Below are positions 28,301 through 51,259 of a stretch of 64,000 nucleotides of DNA, one piece after another. A program made the position numbers and the translations under genes. The notes under the pieces were generated by a model, which searched no databases, had not been told where the DNA came from, and worked only from the letters and a program-made list of their open reading frames with translations. The DNA is from Malacoraja senta (taxonomy: Eukaryota). The first letter of the stretch is position 1; the number at the start of each line of letters is the position of its first letter. The stretch lies in contig CM075985.1 of assembly GCA_038087875.1 (NCBI GenBank), positions 25,544,001 through 25,608,000 of the forward strand, in the 5' to 3' direction.

Positions 28301-28431
28301 ATGGATCAAGATTAGGCAACATATTAGCATATTTTTGTTTAACCTTGTGAAGTATCATTTGAATAACATAAGAATAATATTTGTAGTGTAAGCTTACGAA
28401 AAATCAAAATTTCATAATGAAATATATTTAC

Positions 28432-31503: not shown

Positions 31504-31563
31504 CTGTTGTGGAACTAACGGTAGACTCAGTCGTGACAGTTGTCGCTGTTGTTGGTGTTGTTT
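31504..31563 (-). CDS. Mucin PTS micro-exon (60 nt)
   Basis: ETTPTTATTVTTESTVSSTT; cag/gtgagt; phase 1-1. Confidence 0.9.
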
Positions 31564-31999
31564 CTGGTGAAAGAGTACAAATGAGTTTACAACCACATTA
31601 TACAACTTGAGCAGAAATTGAATTATGTAAGAATCAGCATTTATTAAGGAGCCAGGCCCAAATTCTTTTGACCTTGATCACATATACCTAATCTGAATTT
31701 ACCTAGAATGTTTGTTTGGTCAATCACAATGACAGCCCCACGATAAATGCACCCTGTTTACTAAGCAGATGATCCATGCGACAATTATTTTTTTTTCAGA
31801 ATTTCTGTATCCAAATCTGCAGTGAAATTTATTATATGCACAAAAGTGTAATTGGAAAAAGACACTTTTGCAAAGACATGCAATGACTGAGTCTCACAAG
31901 ATTGAGGTGCATAAGTTAGAGCACGGAATGTTGAAACTAATCATCCTTGATTTCACTAAAATACACATGCAAACATACTTGAAAGATACTATAACTAAC

Positions 32000-32035
32000 C
32001 TGATGTGGTACTTGTACTCGTCTCAGTTGTTGTTT
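32000..32035 (-). CDS. Mucin PTS micro-exon (36 nt)
   Basis: ETTTETSTSTTS; tag/gttagt; phase 1-1. Confidence 0.85.
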
Positions 32036-32213
32036 CTAGTGAAAGAAAAGAATAACATACTCAACAAAGGCAACCAAGTTGAATTGAAACCCATTTGAGA
32101 AACGTTTAACAATACTTGAGAATAATTGAGTAGCTGGCACATTCCATTAAAACATTGTACCATATGTATTATTTTCCTAATCATAAGATTATTGCAGGGC
32201 AAATTGTGTATAG

Positions 32214-32917
32214 ACAATCCTGTTTATATCAATGGGACAATGGTGGAGAGAGTCAAAAACTTCAAATCCCTGGGGGTGCATATTTCCGACGATCTTTCCT
32301 GGACCCAGCACACTGATGCAATTATAAAGGAAGCACATCAGCGCCTCTACTTCCTGAGAAGATTACGGAGATTCGGTATGTCAAAGAGGATTCTATTGAA
32401 TTTCTACAGGTGCACAATAGAAAGCAAATTGACTGGTTGCATCATGGCCTGGTTCGGCAACTTGAACGTCCAGGAGCGGAAAAGACTGCAAAAAGTTGTG
32501 AACACTGCCCAGCCCATCACCGGGTCTGACCTCCCTACCATCGAAGGGATTTATCGGAGTTGCTGTCTCAAAAAGGCAGCCAACATCATCAGAGACTCAC
32601 ACCATCCTGGCCACACACGCATCTCACCACTGCCATCGGGAAGAAGGTATAGGAGCCTGAGAACTGTAACTTCCAGATTCAGGAACAGCTTCTTCCCAAC
32701 AGCCATCAGGCTATTACACACTACAAACTCATAAGCTCTGATTTACAATAGACTATTATTATTATTATTATTATTGCACTGTTATTGTTTGTTTATTTCA
32801 GTATGTGTGTGTCTCATTTATCATATTATTTATTATGATTACATATTCTGTTGTGCTGCAGCAAGTAAGAAGTTCATTGTTCTATCTGGGACATATGACA
32901 ATAAAACACTCTTGACT
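32214..32917 (+). mobile_element. 5'-truncated Rex1/Babar-type LINE (DUF1891-like C-terminus)
   Basis: PVYINGTMVERVKNFKSLGVHISDDLSWTQH..AHQRLYFLRRLRRFG..RFRNSFFPTAIRLL; 3' UTR with (TTA)n and gacaataaaacactcttgact tail. Confidence 0.9.
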
Positions 32918-33984
32918 ACTACAGTTCTTTGTCTTTGTAATTCAACAGATGAGTATTTCAGCGTCAACAGGAAAAAATATTGCTGTGACAAAGTATTCCA
33001 GAAACCTCAGGCTGTATGGTCAACTTTGACTGTATGTTAATCAGAACTGTCTAACCTTGCACATCCACACCACCACTAGTATCAATGGACTTGGTTATTG
33101 GCAAAGAAAGAAGTGGTCCTTTTCTCAGAAAGATTAGACATTAAATATAAATTCTTGTTTACTCAAATTAAAATAATGACATTGCATGAGGGATATGCAT
33201 CATGTGCAGGCAGCTAAGATTAATTTATCTTTTGAAATGTTCAGCAGTAACATTGCGGGCTGAAGAGCCTGTTCCTGTGCTATGTGTTCAATGTGTTATG
33301 TATACTTAATGGATGCCACATATTTATTTAATATGTCTGATTTGTTCAGAATCATAAGTTATTAAAGGCCATTTAATTAAAGGATGATTGGCTTAAATAA
33401 TTTGTATATTATCCTGACATATGTTCAATAATATCACTATTCTTAAATGCCACTAAGCTTGGTATACACAGTTTAAAATGGACTCACAGACCCTAGCTGT
33501 GCAATATTGACCCATTGTCTTATTTCAGTGCTGCCGTTGACAATGTTTTGCTCTTAATGCACCAATTGTAGATTTCATGGAAGTTCAACCGTGTTTTCCA
33601 AAGACTGCATGGTCTACTTTGTTATCTATCTGTCTGTCTGTCTGTCTGTCTGTCTATTTATCTAGTGTTCTGGAAACTCTGCCAAAACAGTACACAATAG
33701 AGCGACAATTTTGGCCCACCTTACTCACCATTGTCCTGCGGTGTGCATTAGCCAAGTTTAGTTCTGATTAATGTTATATTTTACAAGTTATTGACATTTT
33801 AAACTTTACAAAAAACACTTTTCCACTTGCCCTTCCCATCAGCCGTGTTTGACATCACAACAACGTCACAATGGGACTTTAAACTTAAAAAAATCACATT
33901 TCCACTTGCCCTGCCCGTCACCTGCATGACCGCGCGTGCGCAGTGGGCCCGGTATCCGCGTGTGCGGCATTTGAAATAACCGTG

Positions 33985-34217
33985 ATGCTGAGGCTGAGGC
34001 TAGGTCTGTGCGTGGCGGCGCTGCTGCTCTGGCCCTTCGGGGAAGGAGAGGAGTGGGACCCAGGTCAAGGACTGGGCCGCAGCCTCGGCCTCCCCCTCCC
34101 CCAGCTCCAGGCTGCTCAGCCCATCCCTCCCGTTTGCCCCCACCTCAAGTACAACTACATCGCTGATGTGGTGGAGAAAACGGAGCCGGCGGTGGTTTAC
34201 ATCGAGATCCTGGGGAA
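33985..34217 (+). pseudogene. HTRA2: Captured HTRA2/Omi exon-1 fragment
   Basis: [48 protein letters not shown] versus human HTRA2 (from memory) [49 protein letters not shown]. Confidence 0.85.
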
Positions 34218-34341
34218 GTGGGAGGGAGAAGAGGGGGTAGGGTTAGAGAGGAGGGGGGGAGGTATGGAGTGGGCGATAGAGGGAGAGGAGGGCAGTGGGG
34301 GAGGTGAGGAGGGTGATTTGGAGGGGTGGGATAGGAGGGAG

Positions 34342-34428
34342 AGTTCAAGTTCAAGTTCAAGTTCAAGTTCAAGTGAGTTTATTGTCATGTGCCTTGATAG
34401 GACAATGAAATTCTTGCTTTGCTTCAAC
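34342..34428 (-). mobile_element. Short LINE 3' tail with (CTTGAA)n, inserted only in Helitron copy 1
   Basis: Reverse complement aagcaagaatttcattgtcctatc..gacaataaactcacttgaacttgaa resembles the Rex1-type tail at 32860-32917; absent from copy 2. Confidence 0.75.
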
Positions 34429-35540
34429 GGCGAAGAGGAGAGGGGAAAGAAGAGAGATGGTGAAGAGGAGGGTGAGGGAGTGGTGGGGAAGAGGGGGAAT
34501 GGAAGAGCATAGAGGTAGGAAGAGGGATGGTGAGGTAATGGAGGAGGGGAGGGGGAAGAGATAGGAGGGGAGGGGGGATGAGTGGAGGCAGAGGAGGTTT
34601 GATTGAGATTGGGGAGAGGGAGGATAATGGAGGTGGGGAATAGAGGACTGAAGAGGGAGAGTGAGATGCGTTCACATTGATCTTATATTTTACATTATTG
34701 ACATTTAAAAAATTTTAAATGTCGCAGACGCGCTCCCACTTGCCGGCCGCGCCTGCGCAGTTGGGTGAGGGTTGCCGTGACTCACGTCACAATGGGGATC
34801 TCTGGTGTCAAAACGGGAACCTGTCAGCCGCGCCTGTGCAGTTGGGGGCTATGGGTGAGTGGTGGAATATTGTGTCGGAGGAACGAGCCCAACAGGTCCA
34901 CACTTGGTCTAGTTATTACAAATGGTGTGTGATGTGTTTGCACACAATCAGCATTTGTGTTCCAATTTTCCAAATGTACCAGAACCTCACTTGTGCAAAA
35001 TGTGCTGATTCTAATCATGCTTTAACTGGGTATTGCTGAATATCCGAAGAAACTGAGAAAACGAAGACAACAACTCAGTTGGACACAAAGTGCTGAATAA
35101 GGAACTGCAGATGCTGGGTTACACAAAATGACCCAAAGTGCTGAAGAAATCAGCACATCAGGCAGCATCACTGGAGAAAGTGGATAGGTGATGTTGCGGG
35201 TCACGATCCTTCTACAGCTTGGAGACGGAGCTGATCCTAAATAATACATATCCATGTTCTCCCTAGAGGCAGCCTGCCTCGCTGATTACCTCATCACTTT
35301 GTGTCATTTTGTGTAATCTAGCATTTGCGGTTCCTTGCTTCTGTTCCTCCACAATCACTAAGCTTTTTGAAGATTACTTTATAACTTGGTATAATTGGAT
35401 TGAGCCAAACATTGAAATCTTGACGTATATTTTCACCTTGTACATCAATAATGTAAGCAAAGAAGCAAGAAGAGGAAAGAGCTGCTGTTGACCCTGTTGT
35501 CATAAGATTTGCACTGTTTACAGTGAGTGGTTTGACTCAC

Positions 35541-35594
35541 CTGTTGTGGTGGACTCCGTTGTGCCAGTTGTTGAAGATGTTGTTGGTGTTGTTC
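35541..35594 (-). CDS. Mucin PTS micro-exon (54 nt)
   Basis: GTTPTTSSTTGTTESTTT; cag/gtgagt. Confidence 0.9.
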
Positions 35595-36243
35595 CTGGTG
35601 AGAGAGTAAAATGTGTTTACAACTTGAGAGTAGGCTGAATTTTATAAATATTCCATGATGAAATTTATATTTCAATTTAGAAATTTAGCCAAATTCTGCT
35701 TTGTCTGCTTTGCTCATCATTTTTGTTAGGATGGGATCCATTAAATTCTGAACTTTTCAGTGCATTTTTATCCACCTCCACAGTGATATACAGTATATCA
35801 AATAGACTGGTGTGAACAAGAAAATATACATTTCTGAAGACAAATATTGGCTCCTGCTCTTTCAAATGTTCACAGTGCTAATGCACAACACATTGCAAAT
35901 CATCACTATTTTACTAACTAGTATGTATCCTGGAACATAGACTAACCTATCCATGTGCAAATGCTCTTAGACTTTTACTCTAAGTCTGCTGGGCAAAGGG
36001 AAGAGTCTTTTCTCTGAAAAGGCATTGCTGCTGAAATTCTTATCCATGTCTATTGAATGCAAAATGCACCTTAAAAAAATACTGCTGACAGTCAGAACCA
36101 CAGACTCTCACATATTTTCAGTGAGAAACATTAAATTTTAGGAGCAAAACTAATAGGGAAGAATGAAGTATAGAGCTTTATTTTAACAGATCATACAGGT
36201 ACAGAAGGATAAGATAATGTGATTAATAGGTGATGTTACTAAC

Positions 36244-36285
36244 CTGATGTAGTGCTGGTAGTGGTCTCAGTTGTTGGTGTTGTTT
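36244..36285 (-). CDS. Mucin PTS micro-exon (42 nt)
   Basis: ETTPTTETTTSTTS; tag/gttagt. Confidence 0.88.
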
Positions 36286-36615
36286 CTAGAGAAAGTAAAA
36301 AGCTTATATTTAACCAATGCAGGCAAGATGAATGTCAAAATGAATTGGTATGCAGTTGAGAAACCTTTAATAGGAATTCATGTGCTGGCACATTTTATTA
36401 AAATGTTGTACCAAGTGTTGTTTTCTTAATCATAAATGCAGTTGGTGGGCATACTATACTACTACATGTCTTTCCCTTTGTAGATAGCTGGTAGAGCTGT
36501 AGCCGCATAGACCAGAGACTCTGGTTCCACCTTGACCGCGGGTGCTGTCTGCGTGCACATTCTCCCTTTTACAGCGTGGATGGCCTCCAGGTATTTGATA
36601 GATGTTGTTACTAAC

Positions 36616-36663
36616 CTGTTGTAGTGCTGGTAGTGGTCCCAGTTGTTAATGTAGTTGTTGTTT
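36616..36663 (-). CDS. Mucin PTS micro-exon (48 nt)
   Basis: ETTTTLTTGTTTSTTT; cag/gttagt. Confidence 0.88.
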
Positions 36664-37153
36664 CTGGTGAAAGAAAATAATGCTATGGTCAACTAAGGCA
36701 GCCAAGAGAAATAGGTATGCAGTATTGAATCTTCAACAGGAATTCCTGAACTGGATCATTTGATGAAAACGATTTTGAGTTGACATTGTATTAGTGTGTG
36801 ATGTTTCTGAAAACAATGTGCATTTATGTTTGCATATCCAAAAGTGACATGATCCACAACCTGCACAAAATTTGGAGGTTATAATTACGCTTTTGCTTGT
36901 TCCTGCTGAGTATACGTGGAAATGAGAAGCAATAAACTCATGTTCTTCCACATTTCCTAAGTTTTTCTAAGATTACATCATAACTTGATATAATTGATTT
37001 GAGGCAAACATTGACATCTTGACATGTATGTTCACATCATCTATCTCAATAATGTAAGCAAAGATGCAAGAAGTAAGCCAGGGACCTGATCTTAGGAGTG
37101 TTGACCCATTGGCTTAAAATGTGTCACTGCTTACTGAAAGTGGTTTGACTCAC

Positions 37154-37216
37154 CTGTTGTGGAACTGGTGGTGGGCTCAGTTGTGCCAGTTGTCGAAGAT
37201 GTTGTTGGGGTTGTTC
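37154..37216 (-). CDS. Mucin PTS micro-exon (63 nt)
   Basis: GTTPTTSSTTGTTEPTTSSTT; cag/gtgagt. Confidence 0.9.
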
Positions 37217-37387
37217 CTGGAGAGAGAGTACAAACATGTTTACGATTTTAATTGCAAGAGCTGCAGCCACATAATGCCAGAGACCCGCGTTCTATCCTGG
37301 TTTCTCGTGCTGTCTGTGTGGTGTTTGCACGTTCTCCCTTTTACCGTGTGGGTTCCCTCCAGGTGTTTGGTAGATGTTGTTACTAAC

Positions 37388-37435
37388 CTGATGTAGTGCT
37401 TGTAGTGGTCCCTGTTGTTGATGTTGGTGTTGTTT
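37388..37435 (-). CDS. Mucin PTS micro-exon (48 nt)
   Basis: ETTPTSTTGTTTSTTS; tag/gttagt. Confidence 0.88.
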
Positions 37436-37787
37436 CTAGTGAAAGAAAAGAATGCTATGTTCAACTAAAGAAACCTCCAACAGGAATTCATCAGCTGGCA
37501 CATTTTAATAAATTGTTTTACGGTGGTTATTTCCTTCATCGTAGCTTGTGGGAGGGTCTACTTTGCTGCTACATTTCTTCATCTCTGTCAATCAGCAGTT
37601 GACTATTTTGCTCCCATCTCGAACAATCCTACACTCTTGACACTTTGATTGTGGATTTCATGAAGAATTACAAGGCCCTTTTTATTTCAGAAGGTGTTCT
37701 CCTATTTTCCGAGTGAGAATTATTAAATGTTTGCGGCAACACCATGAACAGGCAAGAGGGATATATAGAGCTTAACTTTGACGTTAC

Positions 37788-37838
37788 CTGATGTAGTGCT
37801 GGTTGTGGTCTCAGTTGTTGATGTGGTTGGCTTTGTTT
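37788..37838 (-). CDS. Mucin PTS micro-exon (51 nt)
   Basis: ETKPTTSTTETTTSTTS; cag/gtaacg. Confidence 0.88.
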
Positions 37839-39311
37839 CTGGAGAAGAAAATATTATATTCAATCAAGACAGCTAGGTCAATTGGTACACATTTTAGAAA
37901 CCTTGAACAGACGCACATGAGCTGGTACATTTTATTAAAACATTTATTCAGGTGTTATTTTCTTCATCGTATAACAAAGTTGGACTACCTCATTTCTTTC
38001 TCATTGTCAATCAGCAGCTGATCATTTTAGTGCCATTATAAACAATTATGTTCTCTTATGTTCTGATGTCAGATATCATTGAGGCTCAAACATGTCTTCC
38101 AGAAACTGCAGGTGATCAGACATGCCTATTGAAAGGTGTCAAGCTCAGTGCATCTTTTAATATTACTGTGGGCAATTAGAACCATAACGTCTTTCCATAT
38201 TCAGTGCCATCACAAACAATCATGCATTCTTAATGCATTACACTTGACATTTCCCTCATCGTAGAAAAAAGTGGGAGGACTTAGTATGCTGCTAAATTTC
38301 TTTATCTCTGTCAACTAGCATATTAATACTTTTCTGACATCTCAAACATTCCTGCGTTCTTGACACATCAATTGTGGATTTCCTGGGTATTGAACCATGT
38401 CTTGCAGTATGGACTTCATTATGCCATTCTTACTAACAGTATAGTTGCACAATTCATGACAATAATGTAAGCGAAGATGCAAGAATGGAGCCACAGAGCT
38501 GATATTAGAAATGTTGACCCATTGTCCAAAGATTAGCCAATGTTGGGGTCAAGGAAAGAGCGTTCACGTCGCGGCCCTGTTTCCACCAATCTTTCCACCA
38601 CCGCGCACAAGAAGCACAAGAAGTGACAAGTCAGACACCATTGTATGCAGATGCCGGGAAGTGTGTTCAGCTCTGGCTGAACAACTTCTAATCTTGTGTG
38701 TGGGCTCGATAAGAAGATAAGACGATATACTAAATGGAGGCCACATACTTATATGGGGGAGAAAACTGCAAATGCTGGTTTAAATCAAAGGTTGACACAA
38801 AATGCTGGAGTAACTCAACGGGTCAGGAAGCATCTCTGGTGAGATTTCCTTCATATTTATTTAATGTGTCTGATTTGTGAAGGATGATAGGCTTAAACAA
38901 TTTGAATATCATCATGAGCTGTGTTTAATAATATTACTGTTCTTAAATGCCACTAAGCTTGGTATACACAGTTTCAAATGGACCCACAGACCCCAGCAGT
39001 GAAATATTGACCCATTGTCTTATTTCAGTGCCACTGCTAAACAATCTTTTGCTCTTAATGTACCAATTGCGGATTGTATGGAAGTTCATCCGTGTTTTCC
39101 ATAGACTGTATGGTCTACTTTATACCATTATTACTAATAGTGTGTGATGTGTTTGCACACAATGAGCATTTGTGTTCCATTTGTCCAAATGTGCCAGAAC
39201 CTGAAATTGTGTAAAATGTGCTGATTCTAATCATGCTTTAGCTTGTTATTGCTGAATATCAGAAGAAAATGAGAAACAGAAGCCAACAACTCATTTCGAC
39301 ACAAAGTGCTG

Positions 39312-39556
39312 AACAAGGAACTGCAGATGCTGGATTACACAAAATGATCCAAAGTGCTGAAAAAATCAGCATGTCAGGCAGAATCATTGGAGAACATGGA
39401 TAGGTGACGTTTCGGGTCAGGACCCTTCTACAGTTTGAAGAAGAGAGCCGATCCTAAACAACACTTATCCATGTTCTCCAGAGATGCTGCCTGACTCGCT
39501 GATTACTTCAGCATTTTGTGTCATTTTGTGTAATCCAGCATTTGCGGTGCCTTGTT
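39312..39556. mobile_element. Fold-back Penelope terminal-repeat remnant (paralogs near 35095-35340, 43935-44180, 48545-48790, 52700-52945)
   Basis: ~95-bp inverted arms around a spacer containing gacgtttcgggtcaggacccttctacag. Confidence 0.75.
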
Positions 39557-39775
39557 TTCCCCAACTCGGTTACTCCACAATTCCTAAGCTTTTTGAAGAT
39601 TACTTTATAACTTGGTATAATTGGATTGAGCCAAACATTGATATCTTGACGTGTATATTTTCACCTTGTACATCAATAATGTAAGCAAAGAAGCAAGAGG
39701 TAAGTGCTGCTGTTTGAAATGTTGACCCGGTTGTCTTAAGATTTGCCACTGTTTACAGTGAGAGGTTTGACTCAC

Positions 39776-39829
39776 CTGTTGTGGTGGACTCAGTTGTGCC
39801 AGTTGTTGAAGATGTTGTTGGTGTTGTTC
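39776..39829 (-). CDS. Mucin PTS micro-exon (54 nt)
   Basis: GTTPTTSSTTGTTESTTT; cag/gtgagt. Confidence 0.9.
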
Positions 39830-40248
39830 CTGGTGACAGAGTAAAATGCATTTACATCTTGAATTGTAAGAGTCCGTAATCAGCTTCTGTATGACTCATC
39901 ACATTTTCATGAGAGTCGGCTGAATTTTATAAATATTTCATGATGAAATTTAGATTTAAATTGAGAACTTTTGCCAAATTCTGCTTTGTGTGCTTTGGTC
40001 ATCATTTTGTTAGGATGGGATCCATTAAATTCTGAACTTTTCAGTGCATTTTTATCCACCTCCACAGTGATATACAGTATATCAAATAGACTGGTGTGAA
40101 CAAGAAAGATACATTTCTGAAGACAAATATTGACTCCTGCTCTTTCAAAAGTTCACAGTGCTAATGCACAACACATTGCAACTCATCACAATTTTACTAA
40201 CTAGTATGTATCCTGGAACCTATCCATGAGCAAATGCTCTCAGAGTAA

Positions 40249-40566
40249 ATGCTCTCTCCCACTTTCCCGAGTTACTCACGAACTGTGCCGAGTTTTCCCC
40301 TTGATTCGAACTCGGAGAATTACGATAATAGCCATTCGTAGGTACTCGGGGCTATTTTTTAAACTCGTGGACATTTTTCAACATGTTGAAAAAAGTCCCG
40401 ACTTACCTGATGCCCCGAGTTCCTACGGCTGGCATTACGAGCCGCTATGAAACATGTACGGCCTCCTACCAGCTCGCTACCACTATTCCCCGTCATTCCC
40501 CGAGTTTGAATCAAGGGGAAAACTCGGGAGAGTTCGTGAGTAACTCGGGAAATTGGGATAGTGTCT
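40249..40566. mobile_element. Harbinger-type MITE (unit 2)
   Basis: ~75-bp imperfect TIRs (tcccactttcccgagttactcacgaact ... agttcgtgagtaactcgggaaattggga), flanked by TAA/TTA. Confidence 0.8.
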
Positions 40567-40837
40567 TTAGAGTAAAAGTCTGCGGGGCAAAGGGAAGAGT
40601 CTTATCTCTGAAAAGGCACTGCTGCTGAAATTCTTATCCATGTCTATTGAATGCACAATGCACCTTAAAAAAATACTGCTGACAGTCAGAACCACAGACA
40701 CTCACATATTTTCAGTGAGAAACATTAAATTTTAGGAGCAAAACTAATAGGGAAGAATGAAGTATAGAGCTTTATTTTAACAGATCATACAGGTACAGAA
40801 GGATAAGCTAATGTGATTAATAGGTGATGTTACTAAC

Positions 40838-40879
40838 CTGATGTAGTGCTGGTAGTGGTCTCAGTTGTTGGTGTTGTTT
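40838..40879 (-). CDS. Mucin PTS micro-exon (42 nt)
   Basis: ETTPTTETTTSTTS. Confidence 0.88.
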
Positions 40880-41209
40880 CTAGAGAAAGTAAAAAGATTA
40901 TATTTAACCAATGCAGGCAAGATGAATGTCAAAATGAATTGGTATGCAGTTGAGAAACCTTTAATAGGAATTCATGTGCTGGCACATTTTATTAAAATGT
41001 TGTACCAAGTGTTGTTTTCTTAATCATAAATGCAGTTGGTGGGCATACTATACTACTACATGTCTTTCCCTTTGTAGATAGCTGGTAGAGCTGTAGCCGC
41101 ATAGACCAGAGACTCTGGTTCCACCTTGACCGCGGGTGCTGTCTGCGTGCACATTCTCCCTTTTACAGCGTGGATGGCCTCCAGGTATTTGATAGATGTT
41201 GTTACTAAC

Positions 41210-41257
41210 CTGTTGTAGTGCTGGTAGTGGTCCCAGTTGTTAATGTAGTTGTTGTTT
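41210..41257 (-). CDS. Mucin PTS micro-exon (48 nt)
   Basis: ETTTTLTTGTTTSTTT. Confidence 0.88.
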
Positions 41258-41747
41258 CTGGTGAAAGAAAATAATGCTATGGTCAACTAAGGCAGCCAAG
41301 AGAAATAGTTATGCAGTATTGAATCTTCAACAGGAATTCCTGAACTCGATCATTTGATGAAAACGATTTTGAGTTGACATTGTATTAGTGTGTGATGTTT
41401 CTGAAAACAATGTGCATTTATGTTTGCATATCCAAAAGTGACATGATCCACAACCTGCACAAAATTTGGAGGTTATAATTACGTTTTTGCTTGTTCCTGC
41501 TGAGTATACGTGGAAATGAGAAGCAATAAACTCATGTTCTTCCACATTTCCTAAGTTTTTCTAAGATTACATCATAACTTGATATAATTGATTTGAGGCA
41601 AACATTGAAATCTTGACATGTATGTTTGCATCATCTATCTCAATAATGTTAGAAAAGATGCAAGAAGTAAGCCAGGAACCTGCTCTTAGAAGTGTTGACC
41701 CATTGGCTTAAAATTTGTCACTGCTTACTGAAAGTGGTTTGACTCAC

Positions 41748-41810
41748 CTGTTGTGGAACTGGTGGTGGGCTCAGTTGTGCCAGTTGTTGAAGTTGTTGTT
41801 GGGGTTGTTC
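41748..41810 (-). CDS. Mucin PTS micro-exon (63 nt)
   Basis: GTTPTTTSTTGTTEPTTSSTT. Confidence 0.9.
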
Positions 41811-41981
41811 CTGGAGAGAGAGTACAAACATGTTTACGATTTTAATTGCAAGAGCTGCAGCCACATAATGCCAGAGACCCGCGTTCTATCCTGGTTTGTC
41901 TTGCTGTCTGTGTGGTGTTTGCATGTTCTCCCTTTTACCGTGTGGGTTCCCTCCAGGTGTTTGGTAGATGTTGTTACTAAC

Positions 41982-42029
41982 CTGATGTAGTGCTTGTAGT
42001 GGTCCCAGTTGTTGATGTTGGTGTTGTTT
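41982..42029 (-). CDS. Mucin PTS micro-exon (48 nt)
   Basis: ETTPTSTTGTTTSTTS. Confidence 0.88.
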
Positions 42030-42409
42030 CTAGTGAAAGAAAAGAATGCTATGTTCAACCAAGGAAACCAAGAGGAATAGGTACCAAGTAAAGAAACCTC
42101 CAACAGGAATTCATCATCTGCCACATTTTAATAAATTGTTTTACTGTGGTTATTTCCTTCATCGTAGCTTGTGGGAGGGTCTACTTTGCTGCTAATTTCT
42201 TCATCTCTGTCAATCAGCAGTTGACTATTTTGCTCCCATCTCGAACAATCCTACACTCTTGACACTTTGATTGTGGATTTCATGAAGAATTACAAGGCCC
42301 TTTTTATTTCAGAAGGTGTTCTCCTATTTTCCGAGTGAGAATTATGAAATGTTTGCGGCAACACCATGAACAGGCAAGATGGAAATATAGAGCTTCACTT
42401 TGACGTTAC

Positions 42410-42460
42410 CTGATGTAGTGCTGGTTGTGGTCTCAGTTGTTGATGTGGTTGGCTTTGTTT
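42410..42460 (-). CDS. Mucin PTS micro-exon (51 nt)
   Basis: ETKPTTSTTETTTSTTS. Confidence 0.88.
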
Positions 42461-44399
42461 CTGGAGAAGAAAATATTATATTCAATCAAGACAGCTAGGT
42501 CAATTGGTACACATTTTAGAAACCTTGAACAGAAGCACATGAGCTGGTACATTTTATTAAAACATTTATTCAGGTGTTATTTTCTTCATCGTATAACAAA
42601 GTTGGACTGCCTCATTTCTTTCTCATTGTCAACCAGCAGCTGATCATTTTAGTGCCATTATAAACAATTATGTTCTCTTATGTTCTGATGTCAGATATCA
42701 TTGAGGCTCAAACATGTCTTCCAGAAACTGCAGGTGATCAGACATGCCTATTGAAAGGTGTCATGCTCAGTGCATCTTTTAATATTACTGTGGGCAATTA
42801 GAACCATAAAGTCTTTCCATATTCAGTGCCATCACAAACAATCATGCATTCTTAATGCATTACACTTGACATTTCCCTCATCGTAGAAAAAAGTGGGAGG
42901 ACGTAGTATGCTGCTAAATTTCTTTATCTCTGTCAACTAGCATATTAATACTTTTCTGCCATCTCAAACATTCCTGCGTTCTTGACACATCAATTGTGGA
43001 TTTCCTGGGTATTGAACCATGTCTTGCAGTATGGACTTCATTATGCCATTATTACTAACAGTATAGTTGCACAATTCATGACAATAATGTAATCCAAGAT
43101 GCAAGAATGGAGCCACAGAGCTGATATTAGAAATGTTGACCCATTGTCCAAAGATTAGCCAATGTTGGGGTCAAGGAAAGAGCATTCACGTCGCGGCCCT
43201 GTTTCCACCAATCTTTCCACCACCACGCACAAGAAGCACAAGAAGTGACAAGTCAGACACCATTGTATGCAGATGCCGGGAAGTGTGTTCAGCTCTGGCT
43301 GAACAATTTCTAATCTTGTGTGTGGACTCGATAAGAAGATAAGACGATATACTAAATGGAGGCCACATACATATTTGGGGGAGAAAACTTCAGATGCTGG
43401 TTTAAATCAAAGGTTGACACAAAATGCTGGAGTAACTCAACAGGTCAGGAAGCATCTCTGGTGAGATTTCCTTCATATTTATTTAATGTGTCTGATTTGT
43501 GAAGGATGATAGGCTTAAACAATTTGAATATCATCATGAGCTGTGTTTAATAATATTACTGTTCTTAAATGCCACTAAGGTTGGTATACACCGTTTCAAA
43601 TGGACCCACAGACCCCAGCAGTGAAATATTGACCCATTGTCTTATTTCAGTGCCACTCCTAAACAATCATTTGCTCTTAATGCGCCTATTGCGGATTGTA
43701 TGGAAGTTCTTCCGTGTTTTCCATAGACTGTATGGTCTACTTTATACCATTATTACTAATAGTGTGCGATGTGTTTGCACACAATGAGCATTCGTGTTCC
43801 ATTTGTCCAAATGTGCCAGAACCTGAAATAGTGTAAAATGTGCTGATTCTAATCATTCTTTAGCTTGTTATTGCAGAATATCAGAAGAAAATGAGAAACA
43901 GAAGCCAACAACTCAGTTGGACACAAAGTGCTGAACAAGGAACTGCAGATGCTGGATTACACAAAATGACCCAAAGTGCTGAAAAAATCAGCATGTCAGG
44001 CAGAATCATTGGAGAACATGGATAGGTGACGTTTCGGGTCACGACCCTTCTACAGTTTGAAGAAGAGAGCCGATCCTAAACAACACTTATCCATGTTCTC
44101 CAGAGATGCTGCCTGACTCGCTGATTACTTCAGCATTTTGTGTCATTTTGTGTAATCCAGCATTTGCGGTGCCTTGTTTCTGTTCCAACTCGGTTACTCC
44201 ACAATTCCTAAGCTTTTTGAAGATTACTTTATAACTTGGTATAATTGGATTGAGCCAAACATTGAAATCTTGACATGTACATTTTCAACTTGTATATCAA
44301 TAATGTACGCAAAGAAGCAAGAGGTAAGAACTGCTGTTAGAAATGTTGACCCTGTTGTCTTAAGGTTTGCCACTGTTTACAGTGAGTGGTTTGACTCAC

Positions 44400-44453
44400 C
44401 TGTTGTGGTGGACTCAGTTGTGCCAGTTGTTGAAGATGTTGTTGGTGTTGTTC
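44400..44453 (-). CDS. Mucin PTS micro-exon (54 nt)
   Basis: GTTPTTSSTTGTTESTTT. Confidence 0.9.
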
Positions 44454-44873
44454 CTGGTGAGAGATTAAAATGCGTTTACAACATGAATTGTAAGAGTCCG
44501 TAATCAGCTTCTGTATGACTCATCACATTTTCATGAGAGTCGGCTGAATTTTATAAATATTTCATGATGAAATTTAGATTTAAATTTAGAACTTTTGCCA
44601 AATTCTGCTTTGTGTGCTTTGGTCATCATTTTGTTAGGATGGGATCCATTAAATTCTGAACTTTTCAGTTCATTTTAATCCACCTCCACAGTGATATACA
44701 CTATATCAAATAGACTGGTGTGAACAAGAAAAGATACATTTCTGAAGACAAATATTGATTCCTGCTCTTTCAAAAGTTCACAGTGCTAATGCACAACACA
44801 TTGCAACTCATCTCAATTTTATTAACTAGTATGTATCCTGGAACCTATCCATGAGCAAATGCTCTCAGAGTAA

Positions 44874-45192
44874 AGGCCCTCTCCCACTTTCCCGAGTTAC
44901 TCACGAACTGTGCCGAGTTTTCCCCTTGATTCGAACTCGGAGAATTACGATAATAGCCATTCGTAGGTACTCGGCGCTATTATTTAAACTCGTGGACATT
45001 TTTCAACATGTTGAAAAAACGTCCCGACTTACCTGATGCCCCGAGTTCCTACGGCTGGCATTACGAGCCGCTATGAAACATGTACGGCCTCCTACGAGCT
45101 CGCTACCACTATTCCCCGTCATTCCCCGAGTTTTAATCAAAGGGAAAACTCGGGAGAGTTCGTGAGTAACTCGGGAAATTGGGATAGTGTCT
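44874..45192. mobile_element. Harbinger-type MITE (unit 3)
   Basis: TAA|AGGCCCTCTCCCACT ... GGGATAGTGTCT|TTA; same element as at 40249. Confidence 0.8.
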
Positions 45193-45464
45193 TTAGAGTA
45201 AAAGTCTGCTGGGCAAAGGGAAGAGTCTTATCTCTGAAAAGGCACTGCTGCTGAAATTCTTATCCATGTCTATTGAATGCACAATGCACCTTAAAAAAAA
45301 TACTGCTGACAATCAGAACCACAGACTCTCACATATTTTCAGTGAGAAACATTAAATTTTAGGAGCAAAACTAATAGGGAAGAATGAAGTATAGAGCTTT
45401 ATTTTAACAGATCATACAGGTACAGAAGGATAAGCTAATGTGATTAATAGGTGATGTTACTAAC

Positions 45465-45506
45465 CTGATGTAGTGCTGGTAGTGGTCTCAGTTGTTGGTG
45501 TTGTTT
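45465..45506 (-). CDS. Mucin PTS micro-exon (42 nt)
   Basis: ETTPTTETTTSTTS. Confidence 0.88.
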
Positions 45507-45831
45507 CTAGAGAAAGTAAAAAGATTATATTTAACCAATGCAGGCAAGATGAATGTCAAAATGAATTTGGTATGCAGTTGAGAAACCTTTAATAGGAATT
45601 CATGTGCTGGCACATTTTATTAAAATGTTGTACCAAGTGTTGTTTTCTTAATCATAAATGCAGTTGGTGGGCATACTATACATGTCTTTCCCTTTGTAGA
45701 TAGCTGGTAGAGCTGTAGCCGCATAGACCAGAGACTCTGGTTCCACCTTGACCGTGGGTGCTGTCTGCGTGCACATTCTCCCTTTTACAGCGTGGATGGC
45801 CTCCAGGTATTTGATAGATGTTGTTACTAAC

Positions 45832-45879
45832 CTGTTGTAGTGCTGGTAGTGGTCCCAGTTGTTAATGTAGTTGTTGTTT
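45832..45879 (-). CDS. Mucin PTS micro-exon (48 nt)
   Basis: ETTTTLTTGTTTSTTT. Confidence 0.88.
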
Positions 45880-46369
45880 CTGGTGAAAGAAAATAATGCT
45901 ATGGTCAACTAAGGCAGCCAAGAGAAATAGTTATGCAGTATTGAATCTTCAACAGGAATTCCTGAACTGGATCATTTGATGAAAACGATTTTGAGTTGAC
46001 ATTGTATTAGTGTGTGATGTTTCTGAAAACAATGTGCATTTATGTTTGCATATCCAAAAGTGACATGATCCACAACCTGCACAAAATTTGGAGGTTATAA
46101 TTACGCTTTTGCTTGTTCCTGCTGAGTATATGTGGAAATGAGAAGCAATAAACTCATGTTCTTCCACATTTCCTAAGTTTTTCTAAGATTACATCATAAC
46201 TTGATCTAATTGATTTGAGGCAAACATTGAAATCTTGACATGTATGTTTGCATCATCTATCTCAATAATGTTAGAAAAGATGCAAGAAGTAAGCCAGGGA
46301 CCTGATCTTAGAAGTGTTGACCCATTGGCTTAAAATTTGTCACTGCTTACTGAAAGTGGTTTGACTCAC

Positions 46370-46432
46370 CTGTTGTGGAACTGGTGGTGGGCTCAGTTGT
46401 GCCAGTTGTTGAAGTTGTTGTTGGGGTTGTTC
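46370..46432 (-). CDS. Mucin PTS micro-exon (63 nt)
   Basis: GTTPTTTSTTGTTEPTTSSTT. Confidence 0.9.
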
Positions 46433-46603
46433 CTGGAGAGAGAGTACAAACATGTTTACGATTTTAATTGCAAGAGCTGCAGCCACATAATGCCAGAGAC
46501 CCGCGTTCTATCCTGGTTTGTCTTGCTGTCTGTGTGGTGTTTGCACGTTCTCCCTTTAACCGTGTGGGTTCCCTCCAGGTGTTTGGTAGATGTTGTTACT
46601 AAC

Positions 46604-46651
46604 CTGATGTAGTGCTTGTAGTGGTCCCTGTTGTTGATGTTGGTGTTGTTT
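46604..46651 (-). CDS. Mucin PTS micro-exon (48 nt)
   Basis: ETTPTSTTGTTTSTTS. Confidence 0.88.
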
Positions 46652-47032
46652 CTAGTGAAAGAAAAGAATGCTATGTTCAACCAAGGAAACCAAGAGGAAT
46701 AGGTACCAAGTAAAGAAACCTCCAACAGGAATTCATCATCTGCCACATTTTAATAAATTGTTTTACTGTGGTTATTTCCTTCATCGTAGCTTGTGGGAGG
46801 GTCTACTTTGCTGCTACATTTCTTCATCTCTGTCAATCAGCAGTTGACTATTTTGCTCCCATCTCGAACAATCCTACACTCTTGACACTTTGATTGTGGA
46901 TTTCATGAAGAATTACAAGGCCCTTTTTATTTCAGAAGGTGTTCTCCTATTTTCCGAGTGAGAATTATTAAATGTTTGCGGCAACACCATGAACAGGCAA
47001 GACGGAAATATAGAGCTTAACTTTGACGTTAC

Positions 47033-47083
47033 CTGATGTAGTGCTGGTTGTGGTCTCAGTTGTTGATGTGGTTGGCTTTGTTT
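47033..47083 (-). CDS. Mucin PTS micro-exon (51 nt)
   Basis: ETKPTTSTTETTTSTTS. Confidence 0.88.
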
Positions 47084-49008
47084 CTGGAGAAGAAAATATT
47101 ATATTCAATCAAGACAGCTAGGTCAATTGGTACACATTTTAGAAACCTTGAACAGAAGCACATGAGCTGGTACATTTTATTAAAACATTTATTCACGTGT
47201 TATTTTCTTCATTGTATAACAAAGTTGGACTGCCTCATTTCTTTCTCATTGTCAATCAGCAGCTGATCATTTTAGTGCCATTATAAACAATTATGTTCTC
47301 TTATGTTCTGATGTCAGATATCATTGAGGCTCAAACATGTCTTCCAGAAACTGCAGGTGATCAGACATGCCTATTGAAAGGTGTCATGCTCAGTGCATCT
47401 TTTAATATTACTGTGGGCAATTAGAACCATAAAGTCTTTCCATATTCAGTGCCATCACAAACAATCATGCATTCTTAATGCATTACACTTGACATTTCCC
47501 TCATCGTAGAAAAAAGTGGGAGGACGTAGTATGCTGCTAAATTTCTTTATCTCTGTCAACTAGCATTTTAATACTTTTCTGCCATCTCAAACATTCCTGC
47601 GTTCTTGACACATCAATTGTGGATTTCCTGGGTATTGAACCATGTCTTGCAGTATGGACTTCATTATGCCATTATTACTAACAGTATAGTTGCACAATTC
47701 ATGACAATAATGTAATCCAAGATGCAAGAATGGAGCCACAGAGCTGATATTAGAAATGTTGACCCATTGTCCAAAGATTAGCCAATGTTGGGGTCAAGGA
47801 AAGAGCGTTCACGTCGCGGCCCTGTTTCCACCAATCTTTCCACCACCACGCACAAGAAGCACAAGAAGTGACAAGTCAGACACCATTGTATGCAGATGCC
47901 AAGAAGTGTGTTCAGCTCTGGCTGAACAACTTCTAATCTTGTGTGTAGATTCAATAAGATGATAAGACTCGATAAATTAAATGGATGCCACATACTTATT
48001 TGGGGAAAGAACTGCAGATGCTGGTTTAAATCAAAGGTTGACACAAAATGTTGGAGTAACTCAATGGGTCAGGCAGCATCTCTGGAGAAATTTACTTCAT
48101 ATGTATTTTAAGGTGTTTGATTTGTGAATAGGCTTAAACAATTTGAATATCAACATGAGCTGTGTTCAATAATATTATTATTATTAAATGCCACTAAGCT
48201 TGGTATACACAGTTTCAAATGGACACACAGACCCCAGCAGTGAAATATTGACCCATTGTCTTATGTCAGTGCCACTGCTAAACAATCTTTTGCTCTTAAT
48301 GCACCAATTGCGGATTGTATGTAAGTTCAACTGTGTTTTCCATAGACTGTATGGTCTACTTTATACCATTATTACTAATAGTGTGTGATGTGTTTGCCCA
48401 CAATGAGCATTTGTGTTCCATTTGTCCAAATGTGCCAGAACCTGAAATTGCATAAAATGTGCTGATTCTAATCATGCTTTAGCTTGTTATTGCAGAATAT
48501 CAGAAGAAAACGAGAAGCCAACATTTCATTTGGACACAAAGTGCTGAACAAGAAACTGCAGATGCTGGATTACACAAAATGACCCAAAGTGCTGGAAAAA
48601 TCAGAATGTCAGGCAGCATCACTGGAGAAAGTGGATAGGTGATGTTTCGGGTCAGGACCCTTCTACAGTTTGAAGAAGAGAGCCGATCCTAAACAACACT
48701 TATCCATGTCACCCCGAGATGCTGCCTGACTCGATGATTACTTTAGCACTTTGTGTAATTTTGTGTAATCCAGCATCTGCGGTTCCTTGTTTCTGTTCCA
48801 TTTCAGTTCCTCCGCAATTCCTAAGCATTTTGAAGATTACATCATAACTTGGTATAATTGTATTGTGCCAAACATTTAAATCTTGACATGTATATTTTCA
48901 CCTCGTACGTCAATAGTGTAAGCAGAGAAGCAAGAAGAGGTGCTGTTAGAAATGTTGACCCTGTTGTCTTAAGGTTTGTCATTATTTACAATAAGTGTTT
49001 TGACTCAC

Positions 49009-49062
49009 CTGTTGTGGTGGACTCAGTTGTGCCAGTTGTTGAAGATGTTGTTGGTGTTGTTC
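49009..49062 (-). CDS. Mucin PTS micro-exon (54 nt)
   Basis: GTTPTTSSTTGTTESTTT. Confidence 0.9.
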
Positions 49063-49708
49063 CTGGTGAGAAAGTAAAATGGAATTGTAAGAGTCCATAA
49101 TCAGCTTCTGTATGACAGCACATTTCATGAGGATAGGCTGAATTTTAGAAATATTCAATGGTGAAATTTAGCCAAATTCTGCTGTCTCCTTTGCTCATCA
49201 TTTTGTTAGGATGTGATCCATTAGATTCTGAACTTTTCAGTGCATTTTTATCCACCTCAACAGTGATATACAGTATATAAAATAGACTGAAGTGTGAACA
49301 AGCAAATATACTTTTCTGAAGAAAAATATTGACTCCTGATCTTCCAAAAGTTCACAGTCCTAATGCACAGTACTTTGCAACTCATCTCAATTTTTCTAAC
49401 TAGTGTGTATCTTGGAACATAGACTGTTTACTAACCTATCCATGAGCAAATGCTCTTAGATTTAGTAAAAGTCTGCTGGGCAAAGGGAAGAGTCTTTTCT
49501 CTGAAAAGGCACTGCTGCTGAAATTCTTATCCATGTCTATTGAATGCTCAATGCTCTTTTAAAAAATACTGCTGACAGTCAGAACCACATAGACTCTCGC
49601 ATAATTTCACAATGAGAAACTTGTAGAGCTGTCGCCGCATAGACCAGAGACTCTGGTTCCACCTTGACCTCGGGTGCTGTCTGCGTGCACGTTCTCACTT
49701 TTACTAAC

Positions 49709-49759
49709 CTGATGTAGTACTGGTCGTGGTTTCCGTTGTTGTTGTAGTGGCCGTTGTTT
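49709..49759 (-). CDS. Mucin PTS micro-exon (51 nt)
   Basis: ETTATTTTTETTTSTTS; tag/gttagt. Confidence 0.87.
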
Positions 49760-50567
49760 CTAGTGAAAGAAAATAATTATATATTCAAACAAGACAGCCA
49801 TCAGGAAGGAATCAGTTAGAAAACCATCTACAGGAATTAATCAGCTGGCACATTTTATTAAAACATTTTCCATGGTTTAATAACATGTTCTTCCTTCACA
49901 TTAACTTCATCTTAGAAAAAAAGTGAGAGGGCGTACTATGCTGCTAAATTTTTTATCTCTATTATCTATTGGCATATCAATATTTTGCTGCCATCTCAAA
50001 TAATCCTGTGCTCTTGACACATCGATTGCGGATATCCCTGCGCATCGAAACACGTCTTCCATACAATTTATGTTCTTCTTTATGCCATTATTACTAACAG
50101 TATAGTTGCACGATTCATGACAATAATGTAAGCGAAGGTAAAAGAATGGAGCCACAGAGCTGATGTTAGAAATGTTGCCCCATTGTCCAAAGATTAGCTA
50201 ATGTTTACTAAAAGTAGCAATGTTACAAAATTTTGAGATTTTAAAAATCAAGTCTGTAATTTATCCCATCAGATAAAGCATAAAAAGACATTTAATTTGA
50301 CACCTAATTCACTTTCATATCTTCAGTATTAAAAAAGTTATGGCCATTTTCATACTTGTAAATTAGCATCTTGTTCCCTATTGCTTTTCCATTGACTCAA
50401 CACAAAAGCTGTGATCGAGGACAGTCAAAAGCCCATAACTTTCTTAAAAATTAAGAGAACTGAAAGAAATGTTCAGTTATTATAGATTGAGCCACAGAGC
50501 TGATGTTAGAAATGTTGACCCATTATCTAAAGATTAGCCAATGTTTACTGTAAGTGTTTTGACTCAC

Positions 50568-50630
50568 CTGTTGTGGAACTGGTGGTGGACTCAGTTGTAC
50601 CAGTTGTCGAAGATGTTGTTGGTGTTGTTA
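50568..50630 (-). CDS. Mucin PTS micro-exon (63 nt)
   Basis: (I)TTPTTSSTTGTTESTTSSTT; cag/gtgagt. Confidence 0.88.
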
Positions 50631-51089: not shown

Positions 51090-51259
51090 NNNNNNNNNNN
51101 NNNNNNNNNNNNNNNNNNNNNNNNNNNNNNNNNNNNNNNNNNNNNNNNNNNNNNNNNNNNNNNNNNNNNNNNNNNNNNNNNNNNNNNNNNNNNNNNNNNN
51201 NNNNNNNNNNNNNNNNNNNNNNNNNNNNNNNNNNNNNNNNNNNNNNNNNNNNNNNNNNN
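51090..51259. other. Assembly gap
   Basis: Run of N; hides the 5' end of Helitron copy 2. Confidence 1.

What the first reader, a model, noticed from the sequence alone, without database searches (positions are those of the whole stretch)
31504..50630. Mucin PTS domain built from 23 interchangeable phase-1 micro-exons: a possible combinatorial length-tuning cassette system
Seen: 23 minus-strand exons of 36-63 nt. Each length is a multiple of 3, each is phase 1-1 with AG/GT borders, and none has a stop. Together they encode 394 aa of T/S-rich, Pro-poor, Glu-punctuated sequence. Each cassette begins with a junction codon (mostly G|AA Glu or G|GA Gly). Donors fall into two classes: strong GTGAGT (54/60/63-nt exons) and GTTAGT/GTAACG (36-51-nt exons). 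Established: mammalian MUC2, MUC5AC and MUC5B encode PTS mainly in one giant exon, whereas Xenopus integumentary mucin FIM-B.1 gains polydispersity by splicing repetitive cassettes. Inference: any subset here can be skipped in frame, so the spacer between cross-linking domains (and hence mucus mesh size and O-glycan load) could be set by splicing. The ORF track does not show this structure.
Basis: partly seen in the sequence, partly recalled or inferred. Interest (0 to 1): 0.85.

Follow-up and report, generated by a model that had tools for sequence, protein, structure and literature searches.

The report
Skate mucin core in 23 micro-exons
This 19-kb stretch is the sugar-carrying middle of a skate mucus-protein gene, written as 23 tiny in-frame exons; the exons are real and gene models in a sister skate drop some of them, but the design is already known and regulated length-tuning is not shown.

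Summary
Observation confirmed. All are 3n, phase 1-1, AG/GT-bordered, with two donor classes.

They are real coding exons. They are better conserved than their introns, and all their indels are multiples of three. The collinear locus of Leucoraja erinacea (88-94% nt identity) carries a RefSeq "mucin-2-like" model whose mucin domain uses the same cassettes and the same junctions into the CysD exon.

The array is a hierarchical tandem repeat: a 4.6-kb, six-exon unit present about 3.1 times, built from two old exon families. The upstream "TIL exon" is TIL-4 of an intact 9.7-kb duplicate of the whole D4 module, not the D3 end.

On splicing, all 13 alternative L. erinacea RefSeq isoforms equal isoform X1 minus whole micro-exons. 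Single skips hit only weak-donor exons. This is indirect support for variable inclusion. Regulation and any effect on mesh size remain untested.

The design is known from chicken and zebrafish Muc13 and from frog FIM mucins. It is annotated in sharks, a stingray and a sawfish. This scan already found it in other arrays of the same genome. Verdict: new member of a known kind.

The parts
53147..53253 (-). TIL-4a exon, last exon of the duplicated D4 module; ends in phase 1 with donor GTAAGT
   Evidence: weak Pfam TIL match
53131..62811 (-). D4a module: intact duplicate of the seven exons pre-D4/VWD4/C8-4/TIL-4
   Evidence: 94% identical to 18756-28371; exons open with AG/GT kept; dN/dS 0.29; VWD
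50798..53120 (-). partial copy of intron 21 (including the Helitron/HTRA2 piece) between TIL-4a and exon 1; contains the N run 51090-51259
50568..50630 (-). micro-exon 1, 63 nt, class A, donor GTGAGT
49709..49759 (-). micro-exon 2, 51 nt, class B, donor GTTAGT
49009..49062 (-). micro-exon 3, 54 nt, class A
47033..47083 (-). micro-exon 4, 51 nt, class B, donor GTAACG (unit 3)
46604..46651 (-). micro-exon 5, 48 nt, class B (unit 3)
46370..46432 (-). micro-exon 6, 63 nt, class A (unit 3)
45832..45879 (-). micro-exon 7, 48 nt, class B (unit 3)
45465..45506 (-). micro-exon 8, 42 nt, class B (unit 3)
44400..44453 (-). micro-exon 9, 54 nt, class A (unit 3)
42410..42460 (-). micro-exon 10, 51 nt, class B, GTAACG (unit 2)
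41982..42029 (-). micro-exon 11, 48 nt, class B (unit 2)
41748..41810 (-). micro-exon 12, 63 nt, class A (unit 2)
41210..41257 (-). micro-exon 13, 48 nt, class B (unit 2)
40838..40879 (-). micro-exon 14, 42 nt, class B (unit 2)
39776..39829 (-). micro-exon 15, 54 nt, class A (unit 2)
37788..37838 (-). micro-exon 16, 51 nt, class B, GTAACG (unit 1)
37388..37435 (-). micro-exon 17, 48 nt, class B (unit 1)
37154..37216 (-). micro-exon 18, 63 nt, class A (unit 1)
36616..36663 (-). micro-exon 19, 48 nt, class B (unit 1)
36244..36285 (-). micro-exon 20, 42 nt, class B (unit 1)
35541..35594 (-). micro-exon 21, 54 nt, class A; matches L. erinacea exon 53
32000..32035 (-). micro-exon 22, 36 nt, class B; matches L. 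erinacea exon 54
31504..31563 (-). micro-exon 23, 60 nt, class A; matches L. erinacea exon 55
35982..49460 (.). tandem genomic repeat, about 4.6-kb unit x 3.1, six micro-exons (102 aa) per unit
28432..28805 (-). CysD exon (phase 1 in, phase 0 out) with a short Thr-rich tail
   Evidence: Pfam Mucin2_WxxW E=1.7e-14
18756..28371 (-). D4b module, the downstream copy of the seven D4 exons
10453..18660 (-). C-terminal exons (32-nt linker, VWC-like, cystine knot, stop codon)
   Evidence: Cys_knot

Best explanation
The 23 segments are genuine coding exons. Together they encode the O-glycosylated mucin (PTS) domain of a skate gel-forming mucin, the counterpart of Leucoraja erinacea 'mucin-2-like' (XP_055509503 and its isoforms). 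The domain was built by repeated tandem duplication of exon-plus-intron modules. First, two exon families arose: class A (54-63 nt, consensus GTGAGT donor) and class B (36-51 nt, GTTAGT or GTAACG donor, off consensus at +3 or +5). Later a six-exon, 4.6-kb unit was copied about three times. Every exon is 3n and lies between phase-1 introns, and no junction codon can be a stop. So both germline gain or loss of units and exon skipping leave the reading frame intact. Domain length therefore probably varies in two ways. Between genomes it varies by unit copy number. Within an animal it probably varies through leaky skipping of weak-donor class B cassettes. Shown here: the exon structure, selection on the exons, orthology and the duplications. 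Inferred: expression in this species, and real rather than modelled skipping. Unknown: whether skipping is regulated.
For: All 23 exons were recovered by a mechanical scan, with none elsewhere in the window. Among the three units, 4 of 306 exon columns vary against 196 of 3893 intron columns (Fisher p = 0.0012); exons carry no gaps while introns carry 444 gapped columns. Across old paralogues, exon identity is 86-91% against about 64% in 120-nt flanks; every exon indel is 3, 9 or 15 nt; splice signals are kept. The window is collinear with L. erinacea CM054028.1 at 88-94% nt identity, introns included. An exact spliced alignment of RefSeq X1 on that locus gives 26 PTS micro-exons of 36-75 nt, all phase 1-1, with the same size and donor classes. 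Its last three cassettes and the junction into CysD match window exons 21-23. Isoforms X2-X14 are each exactly X1 minus 1-5 whole micro-exons. Ten of 18 class B exons are skipped in some isoform against 1 of 8 class A exons. Exon ends shared at the skip junctions are mostly 7 nt or fewer. A sawfish mucin model has the same phase 1-1 micro-exons of 51-60 nt. Catshark and smooth-hound models vary by Thr/Ser-rich segments. Unit number and unit size differ between the two skates.
Against: No transcript of this species was available. Its protein is absent from the protein collection. RefSeq isoforms are computed models and I could not inspect the reads behind them. Near-identical exons invite mapping errors: isoforms X5 and X6 have 11-13 nt of shared exon ends at the skip junction. 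RefSeq X1 leaves out 11 intact genomic micro-exons, which shows that the models are uncertain in the repeat. The class bias is only borderline significant. Lower exon divergence could partly reflect gene conversion.
Confidence: 0.62

Rival explanations
1. Regulated combinatorial cassette system: tissues or physiological states choose which micro-exons to include. This would set PTS length, O-glycan load and mucus mesh size, with weak-donor class B exons as the regulated elements.
For: Any subset is in frame. The weak donors are retained across paralogues whose flanks have drifted to about 64% identity, and across species. RefSeq isoforms skip class B exons singly and in non-adjacent combinations. 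Many such isoforms are modelled in catshark (at least 39) and smooth-hound (at least 48).
Against: There is no tissue-resolved data. The modelled skips remove only 13-86 of about 445 PTS residues, a small change for a polymer spacer. Isoform counts in repeats can be inflated by the annotation method. No conserved intronic regulatory element was sought or found. An earlier follow-up on another array of this genome saw no mixing and matching.
Confidence: 0.15
2. Constitutive micro-exons: all 23 are always spliced in. On this view the exon-skipping isoforms in sister-species annotation are artefacts of short reads mapped to near-identical repeated exons.
For: The units are 93-99% identical. RefSeq X1 itself jumps over 11 intact exons. 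Some skip junctions share 11-13 nt of exon end.
Against: Most skip junctions join exon types that are never neighbours in the full transcript and share only 0-7 nt at their ends. Exact mis-placement of read overhangs therefore cannot create them. The skips are concentrated on weak-donor exons, which mapping error does not predict.
Confidence: 0.2
3. Not a functional coding array: either a decaying macrosatellite derived from a mucin gene, or an assembly artefact that inflates the copy number.
For: The array has high internal similarity and lies in a rearranged region. An N run (51090-51259) sits just upstream of exon 1.
Against: None of the 23 exons has a stop or frameshift, and there is selection against exon change and exon indels. 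Units differ by 2.7-4.1% in their introns, too much for duplicated assembly of one copy. The sequence flanking the N run is collinear with the L. erinacea locus. The orthologous array is part of a RefSeq coding model.
Confidence: 0.03

Closest known systems
Leucoraja erinacea 'mucin-2-like' gene (RefSeq XP_055509503-XP_055509517; CM054028.1:13.01-13.09 Mb)
   Same: The locus is collinear at 88-94% nt identity. It has the same cassette peptides, the same two exon and donor classes, the same last three cassettes and the same CysD junction. The downstream order is also the same: D4, VWC, cystine knot.
   Different: L. erinacea has one D4 module; the window has two. Its array has 37 candidate exons in units of about 2.85 kb, against 23 exons in 4.6-kb units here. 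The arrays have expanded or been homogenised separately.
Chicken and zebrafish Muc13 (Lang, Hansson, Samuelsson 2006, PMC1552070)
   Same: The PTS domain is split into multiple exons with one repeat unit per exon. [quoted passage not shown]
   Different: Muc13 is a transmembrane SEA-domain mucin, not a VWD gel-former. The paper reports no hierarchy of units and no two donor classes.
Xenopus laevis integumentary mucins FIM-B.1 and FIM-C.1 (Hoffmann laboratory, 1990-1993)
   Same: These are secreted mucins whose size heterogeneity is attributed to alternative splicing of repetitive modules. [quoted passage not shown] FIM-B.1 has VWD domains.
   Different: They are frog skin mucins with TFF or SCR modules. 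I could not read the original papers, so their exon sizes and phases are not compared.
Mammalian MUC2, MUC5AC and MUC5B
   Same: The protein family and domain vocabulary are shared: VWD/C8/TIL, CysD, PTS and cystine knot.
   Different: Their PTS domains lie in one large exon (PMC1552070), so length varies only as a germline VNTR. They have a single D4.
Other elasmobranch gel-forming mucin models (Pristis pectinata, Hypanus sabinus, Scyliorhinus canicula, Mustelus asterias) and other arrays in this genome
   Same: The sawfish PTS is in 51-60-nt phase 1-1 exons, most beginning with Glu. Catshark and smooth-hound isoforms differ by Thr/Ser-rich segments. The scan recorded at least five more micro-exon arrays nearby.
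   Different: The cassette sequences, exon numbers and interleaving with CysD exons differ.

Membership tests
Gel-forming (VWD-type) mucin | VWD-C8-TIL assemblies | tested here: met
   Pfam matches to VWD (E 7e-18 and 9e-17) and C8 (8e-09), plus a partial TIL. Exon-by-exon match to D4 of the Hypanus and Leucoraja mucins. The N-terminal D1-D3 region lies outside the window.
Gel-forming (VWD-type) mucin | Thr/Ser-rich PTS domain | tested here: met
   394 aa with 78% T+S.
Gel-forming (VWD-type) mucin | CysD (Mucin2_WxxW) domain and C-terminal cystine knot | tested here: met
   PF13330 at E 1.7e-14 and PF00007 at E 2.6e-05, both above the curated cut-offs.
Multi-exon (cassette) PTS domain, as in chicken Muc13 | Each exon encodes one repeat unit of the PTS | tested here: met
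   There are 23 exons of 12-21 codons, each one Thr-rich repeat. The organisation is the same in the RefSeq model of the sister species.
Multi-exon (cassette) PTS domain, as in chicken Muc13 | Exons are spliced into mRNA | tested here: inconclusive
   No transcript of this species was reachable. Support is indirect: exon conservation and RefSeq models of the collinear L. erinacea gene.
Alternatively spliced mucin repeats (FIM-B.1/FIM-C.1 type polydispersity) | Transcripts that differ by whole repeat cassettes | tested here: inconclusive
   Thirteen RefSeq isoforms of the orthologue equal X1 minus whole micro-exons. These are computed models, and the reads were not inspected.
Alternatively spliced mucin repeats (FIM-B.1/FIM-C.1 type polydispersity) | Size heterogeneity of the protein | not testable with these tools
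   Needs gel or mass analysis of skate mucus.
Orthologue of L. erinacea mucin-2-like | Collinear locus with the same exon order | tested here: met
   88-94% nt identity over exons and introns from the array to the stop codon.
Orthologue of L. erinacea mucin-2-like | Same domain architecture (single D4 after the CysD) | tested here: not met
   The window has an extra intact D4 module upstream of the array.

The most novel reading that the evidence does not exclude
Cartilaginous-fish gel-forming mucins use weak-donor micro-exons as regulated cassettes, so that tissues set PTS length and glycan load by splicing. In this species the same gene has also acquired a second D4 cross-linking module. That would give a D4-PTS-CysD-D4 polymer whose spacer between two cross-linking nodes is splice-tunable.
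Probability: 0.12. Interest if true: 0.7.

Novelty: new member of a known kind. Interest (0 to 1): 0.38.

Why it matters
Textbook gel-forming mucins carry their glycosylated core in one giant exon, so its length changes only by germline repeat variation. Here the whole core is a string of frame-neutral micro-exons, as in other elasmobranch mucins. The gene can therefore change core length by unit duplication and, possibly, by splicing within one animal.

Lang et al. raised that possibility in 2006 and, as far as I could find, it has not been tested for a gel-forming mucin. The little skate is a laboratory species with a matching locus and 14 modelled isoforms, which makes it a direct system for the test.

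The practical lesson for annotation is that these 'macrosatellites' are coding. Short-read gene models in them are also unreliable: 11 intact exons are left out of the longest L. erinacea model.

Tried and rejected
1. I searched for this species' own protein or transcript fragments. A length-unrestricted HMMER search with the CysD exon gave only relatives at 59% identity or less. Two word-index searches seeded with Hypanus and Leucoraja proteins found no product of the window. A search for short CysD-containing fragments found nothing. Expression in this genome is therefore untested.

2. The Hypanus sabinus locus could not be fetched because the gene range exceeds 100 kb. The Amblyraja radiata isoform is not on record.

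3. Lang et al. 2007 (PMC2042186) is not held. The original FIM-B.1 and FIM-C.1 papers are not in the library, so I used only the secondary statement in PMC7177656.

4. Tandem Repeats Finder reports nothing for the array because its longest period is 500 nt. The repeat shows only in pairwise comparison.

5. I considered that the skip isoforms are overhang mis-mapping. For most junctions this is rejected, because shared exon ends are 7 nt or fewer. It remains open for isoforms X5 and X6.

6. I considered that the D4a copy is an assembly artefact or pseudogene. This is rejected: it is 6% diverged from D4b, all seven exons are intact and dN/dS is 0.29.

7. Other weak candidate 'exons' from the scan have poor GTTTTC or GTGCAG donors and no counterpart in the RefSeq model, so I treated them as chance. 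Examples are the 36-nt segments at 45987-46022 and 46083-46118 and their copies.
Full report
**1. The observation**

I scanned the minus strand for segments bordered by AG and GT, 27-99 nt long, a multiple of three, open when read from the third base, and at least 45% Thr+Ser.
Taking the consensus-like donor at each acceptor gives 23 exons.
- They sum to 1182 nt, or 394 aa. Composition is T 62.5%, S 15.7%, E 8.1%, P 5.3%, G 5.3%.
- Each exon ends with G as the first base of a split codon. The following exon starts with AA, GA or (exon 1) TA, giving Glu, Gly or Val/Ile.
- Donors fall into the two classes described. GTGAGT sits on the nine 54/60/63-nt exons. GTTAGT (eleven exons) or GTAACG (three exons) sits on the 36-51-nt exons.
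- The upstream exon 53147-53253 ends in phase 1 before GTAAGT. The CysD exon 28432-28805 begins in phase 1.
- All possible junction codons are sense codons, so 'any subset is in frame' is arithmetically true.
- A stricter scan of the whole window, on both strands and in three offsets, finds no such exon outside the array.

**2.

The array is a hierarchical tandem repeat.
- A unit of about 4.6 kb with six exons (54, 42, 48, 63, 48 and 51 nt, or 102 aa) is present about 3.1 times between 35982 and 49460, at 93-96% identity.
- Inside the unit, exon-plus-flank modules of 200-300 nt are 70-80% identical and form two families. Class A holds the long exons with GTGAGT donors. Class B holds the short exons with GTTAGT or GTAACG donors.
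- The two donor classes are therefore two old exon lineages, each copied together with its intron ends.
- Only about nine to eleven exon types are independent, not 23.

**3. Are they real exons?**

- Among the three units, 4 of 306 exon columns vary against 196 of 3893 ungapped intron columns (Fisher p = 0.0012). Exons have no gapped column while introns have 444.
- Among the older paralogues, exon identity is 86-91% against about 64% for 120-nt flanks. All exon length differences are 3, 9 or 15 nt. Polypyrimidine-AG and GT signals are kept.
- This is the signature of coding constraint, though gene conversion may contribute.

**4. Relatives**

- A full HMMER search with the CysD exon led to Hypanus sabinus mucin-2-like (P0025). 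From there I reached Leucoraja erinacea mucin-2-like isoforms, which are 86-92% identical to the window's non-PTS exons.
- The L. erinacea locus (L001) is collinear with the window at 88-94% nucleotide identity, introns included, from the array to the stop codon.
- No closer L. erinacea protein exists in the collection. The window is therefore most likely the orthologous locus of another skate.
- I aligned RefSeq isoform X1 exactly onto L001 with a spliced search requiring perfect translation. This gives 68 exons. Exons 30-55 are PTS micro-exons of 36-75 nt, all between phase-1 introns, with the same size and donor classes.
- The end of the L. erinacea PTS consists of a 54-nt, a 36-nt and a 60-nt cassette followed by the CysD exon. 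It matches window exons 21, 22 and 23 and the CysD exon almost residue for residue.
- The smalltooth sawfish mucin-2-like model has the same design: phase 1-1 exons of 51-60 nt, most starting with Glu, interleaved with CysD exons.

**5. Splicing variability**

- The L. erinacea gene has 14 RefSeq isoforms of 2320 to 2234 aa. Each of the 13 shorter ones is reproduced exactly by deleting one to five whole micro-exons from X1.
- The seven single-exon skips all remove class B exons with GTTAGT, GTAATG or GTTAGG donors.
- Isoforms X9, X10 and X12 combine non-adjacent class B skips while keeping the exons between them.
- The one class A exon that is ever missing (exon 41) is lost only as part of multi-exon deletions.
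- Ten of 18 class B exons are skipped in some isoform, against 1 of 8 class A exons. This is borderline (Fisher one-sided p = 0.049, two-sided p = 0.084).
- I asked whether the skip junctions could arise from read overhangs placed on the wrong copy. For most events the skipped exon and its neighbour share only 0-7 nt at the relevant end. For X5 and X6 they share 11-13 nt.
- Catshark and smooth-hound mucin models (at least 39 and 48 isoforms) also differ by Thr/Ser-rich segments.
- From general knowledge of NCBI's pipeline, alternative isoforms are built from transcript or RNA-seq alignments. I could not inspect that evidence.
- X1 omits 11 intact genomic micro-exons, which shows that models in this repeat are imperfect.
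- I therefore rate some real skipping of weak-donor cassettes as more likely than not. Regulated tuning is unproven.

**6. Context: a duplicated D4 module**

- Mapping the Hypanus and Leucoraja proteins onto the window shows that the 'TIL exon' at 53147-53253 is TIL-4, the last exon of the D4 assembly. It is not the end of D3.
- A 9.7-kb segment, 18756-28371, is duplicated at 53131-62811 with 94% identity.
- Both copies keep all seven exons open with AG/GT borders. Exon divergence is 1.7% against 5.9% overall, and dN/dS is 0.29.
- The order on the minus strand is D4a, 23 micro-exons, CysD, D4b, a 32-nt linker, VWC-like exons and the cystine knot.
- The L. erinacea gene has only one D4.
- The duplication ends 60 nt downstream of the CysD exon on one side.
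- On the other side, 27 nt after the TIL-4a donor, it joins a 2.3-kb copy of intron 21 (53120-50798, matching 35489-32804).
- The N run at 51090-51259 is flanked by sequence collinear with L001, so the join looks sound.
- Exon 57a needs a phase-0 donor upstream, which a micro-exon cannot supply. A CysD-type exon is therefore expected beyond the window's end.
- Whether D4a and D4b are in one transcript is unknown.

**7. Mechanism**

- The most likely account is that the array is the gene's mucin domain. It grew by unequal recombination of exon-plus-intron modules.
- The uniform phase 1-1 design makes any gain, loss or skip frame-neutral.
- Units within the window are more alike than any is to L. 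erinacea units: 96-97% in introns, against about 90-92% between species. The unit also differs in size and number between the species. The arrays have therefore turned over since the species split.
- This germline route to length change is at least as well supported as splicing.
- Class B donors depart from the vertebrate 5' splice-site consensus at +3 (T instead of a purine) or at +5. From general splicing knowledge, this predicts weaker U1 pairing and fits their preferential skipping.

**8. Comparison with what is known, and novelty**

- Lang, Hansson and Samuelsson (2006, PMC1552070) showed that chicken Muc13 (and, unpublished, zebrafish Muc13) encode the PTS domain in multiple exons, one repeat per exon. 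They proposed length control by alternative splicing and noted that all earlier mucins have a single PTS exon.
- Frog FIM-C.1 is described as highly polymorphic through alternative splicing (PMC7177656).
- I found no paper on elasmobranch mucin gene structure. RefSeq already carries such models.
- This scan has also followed up two other arrays of the same genome, with the same verdict: real, known design.
- What this report adds is the isoform dissection in the orthologue, with its weak-donor bias; the two-family hierarchy; and the D4 duplication.
- I class the finding as a new member of a known kind, of moderate interest.

Noticed in passing
window 53131-62811 versus 18756-28371: An intact 9.7-kb duplicate of the whole D4 (VWD4-C8-4-TIL-4) module lies upstream of the micro-exon array. 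It is 94% identical to the downstream copy, with exon dN/dS of 0.29. L. erinacea has a single copy. This implies either a mucin with two D4 modules or a partial upstream gene copy.
   Followed up: partly
The upstream copy forms the junction just after the TIL-4a exon, so the piece was duplicated together with the intron.
   Followed up: partly
window 62812-64000: Homology to both the D4b copy and L. erinacea stops abruptly at 62811. The remaining 1.2 kb carries dispersed-repeat matches and a 54-nt inverted repeat (64000-63947 versus 63251-63304). It is possibly a transposon insertion that hides the upstream CysD exon.
   Followed up: no
window 32126-32734 (+): A 202-aa open frame that looks like the C-terminal part of a LINE reverse transcriptase, inside intron 21 of the mucin gene.
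   Followed up: no
L001:55471-60734: Eleven intact, well-bordered micro-exons (two repeat units) of the L. erinacea array are absent from the longest RefSeq isoform. Either they are constitutively skipped or the model is incomplete in the repeat.
   Followed up: partly
L001:69602-69655: The L. erinacea counterpart of window exon 21 has a GC donor (GCGAGT) in the RefSeq-consistent alignment. The window has GTGAGT.
   Followed up: no
P0274 (XP_055509560, L. erinacea 'mucin-19-like', 1341 aa): A separate L. erinacea model holds only D1-D3 plus the first cassettes of a PTS built from the same micro-exon peptides. It sits in the same 90% cluster and is probably a truncated model of a paralogue or of the same gene family.
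   Followed up: no
L002 (Pristis pectinata CM019873.1:30756384-30851454): In the sawfish mucin-2-like model, phase 1-1 micro-exons of 51-60 nt, most starting with Glu, alternate with two CysD exons that also start in phase 1. The design is therefore shared across batoids.
   Followed up: partly
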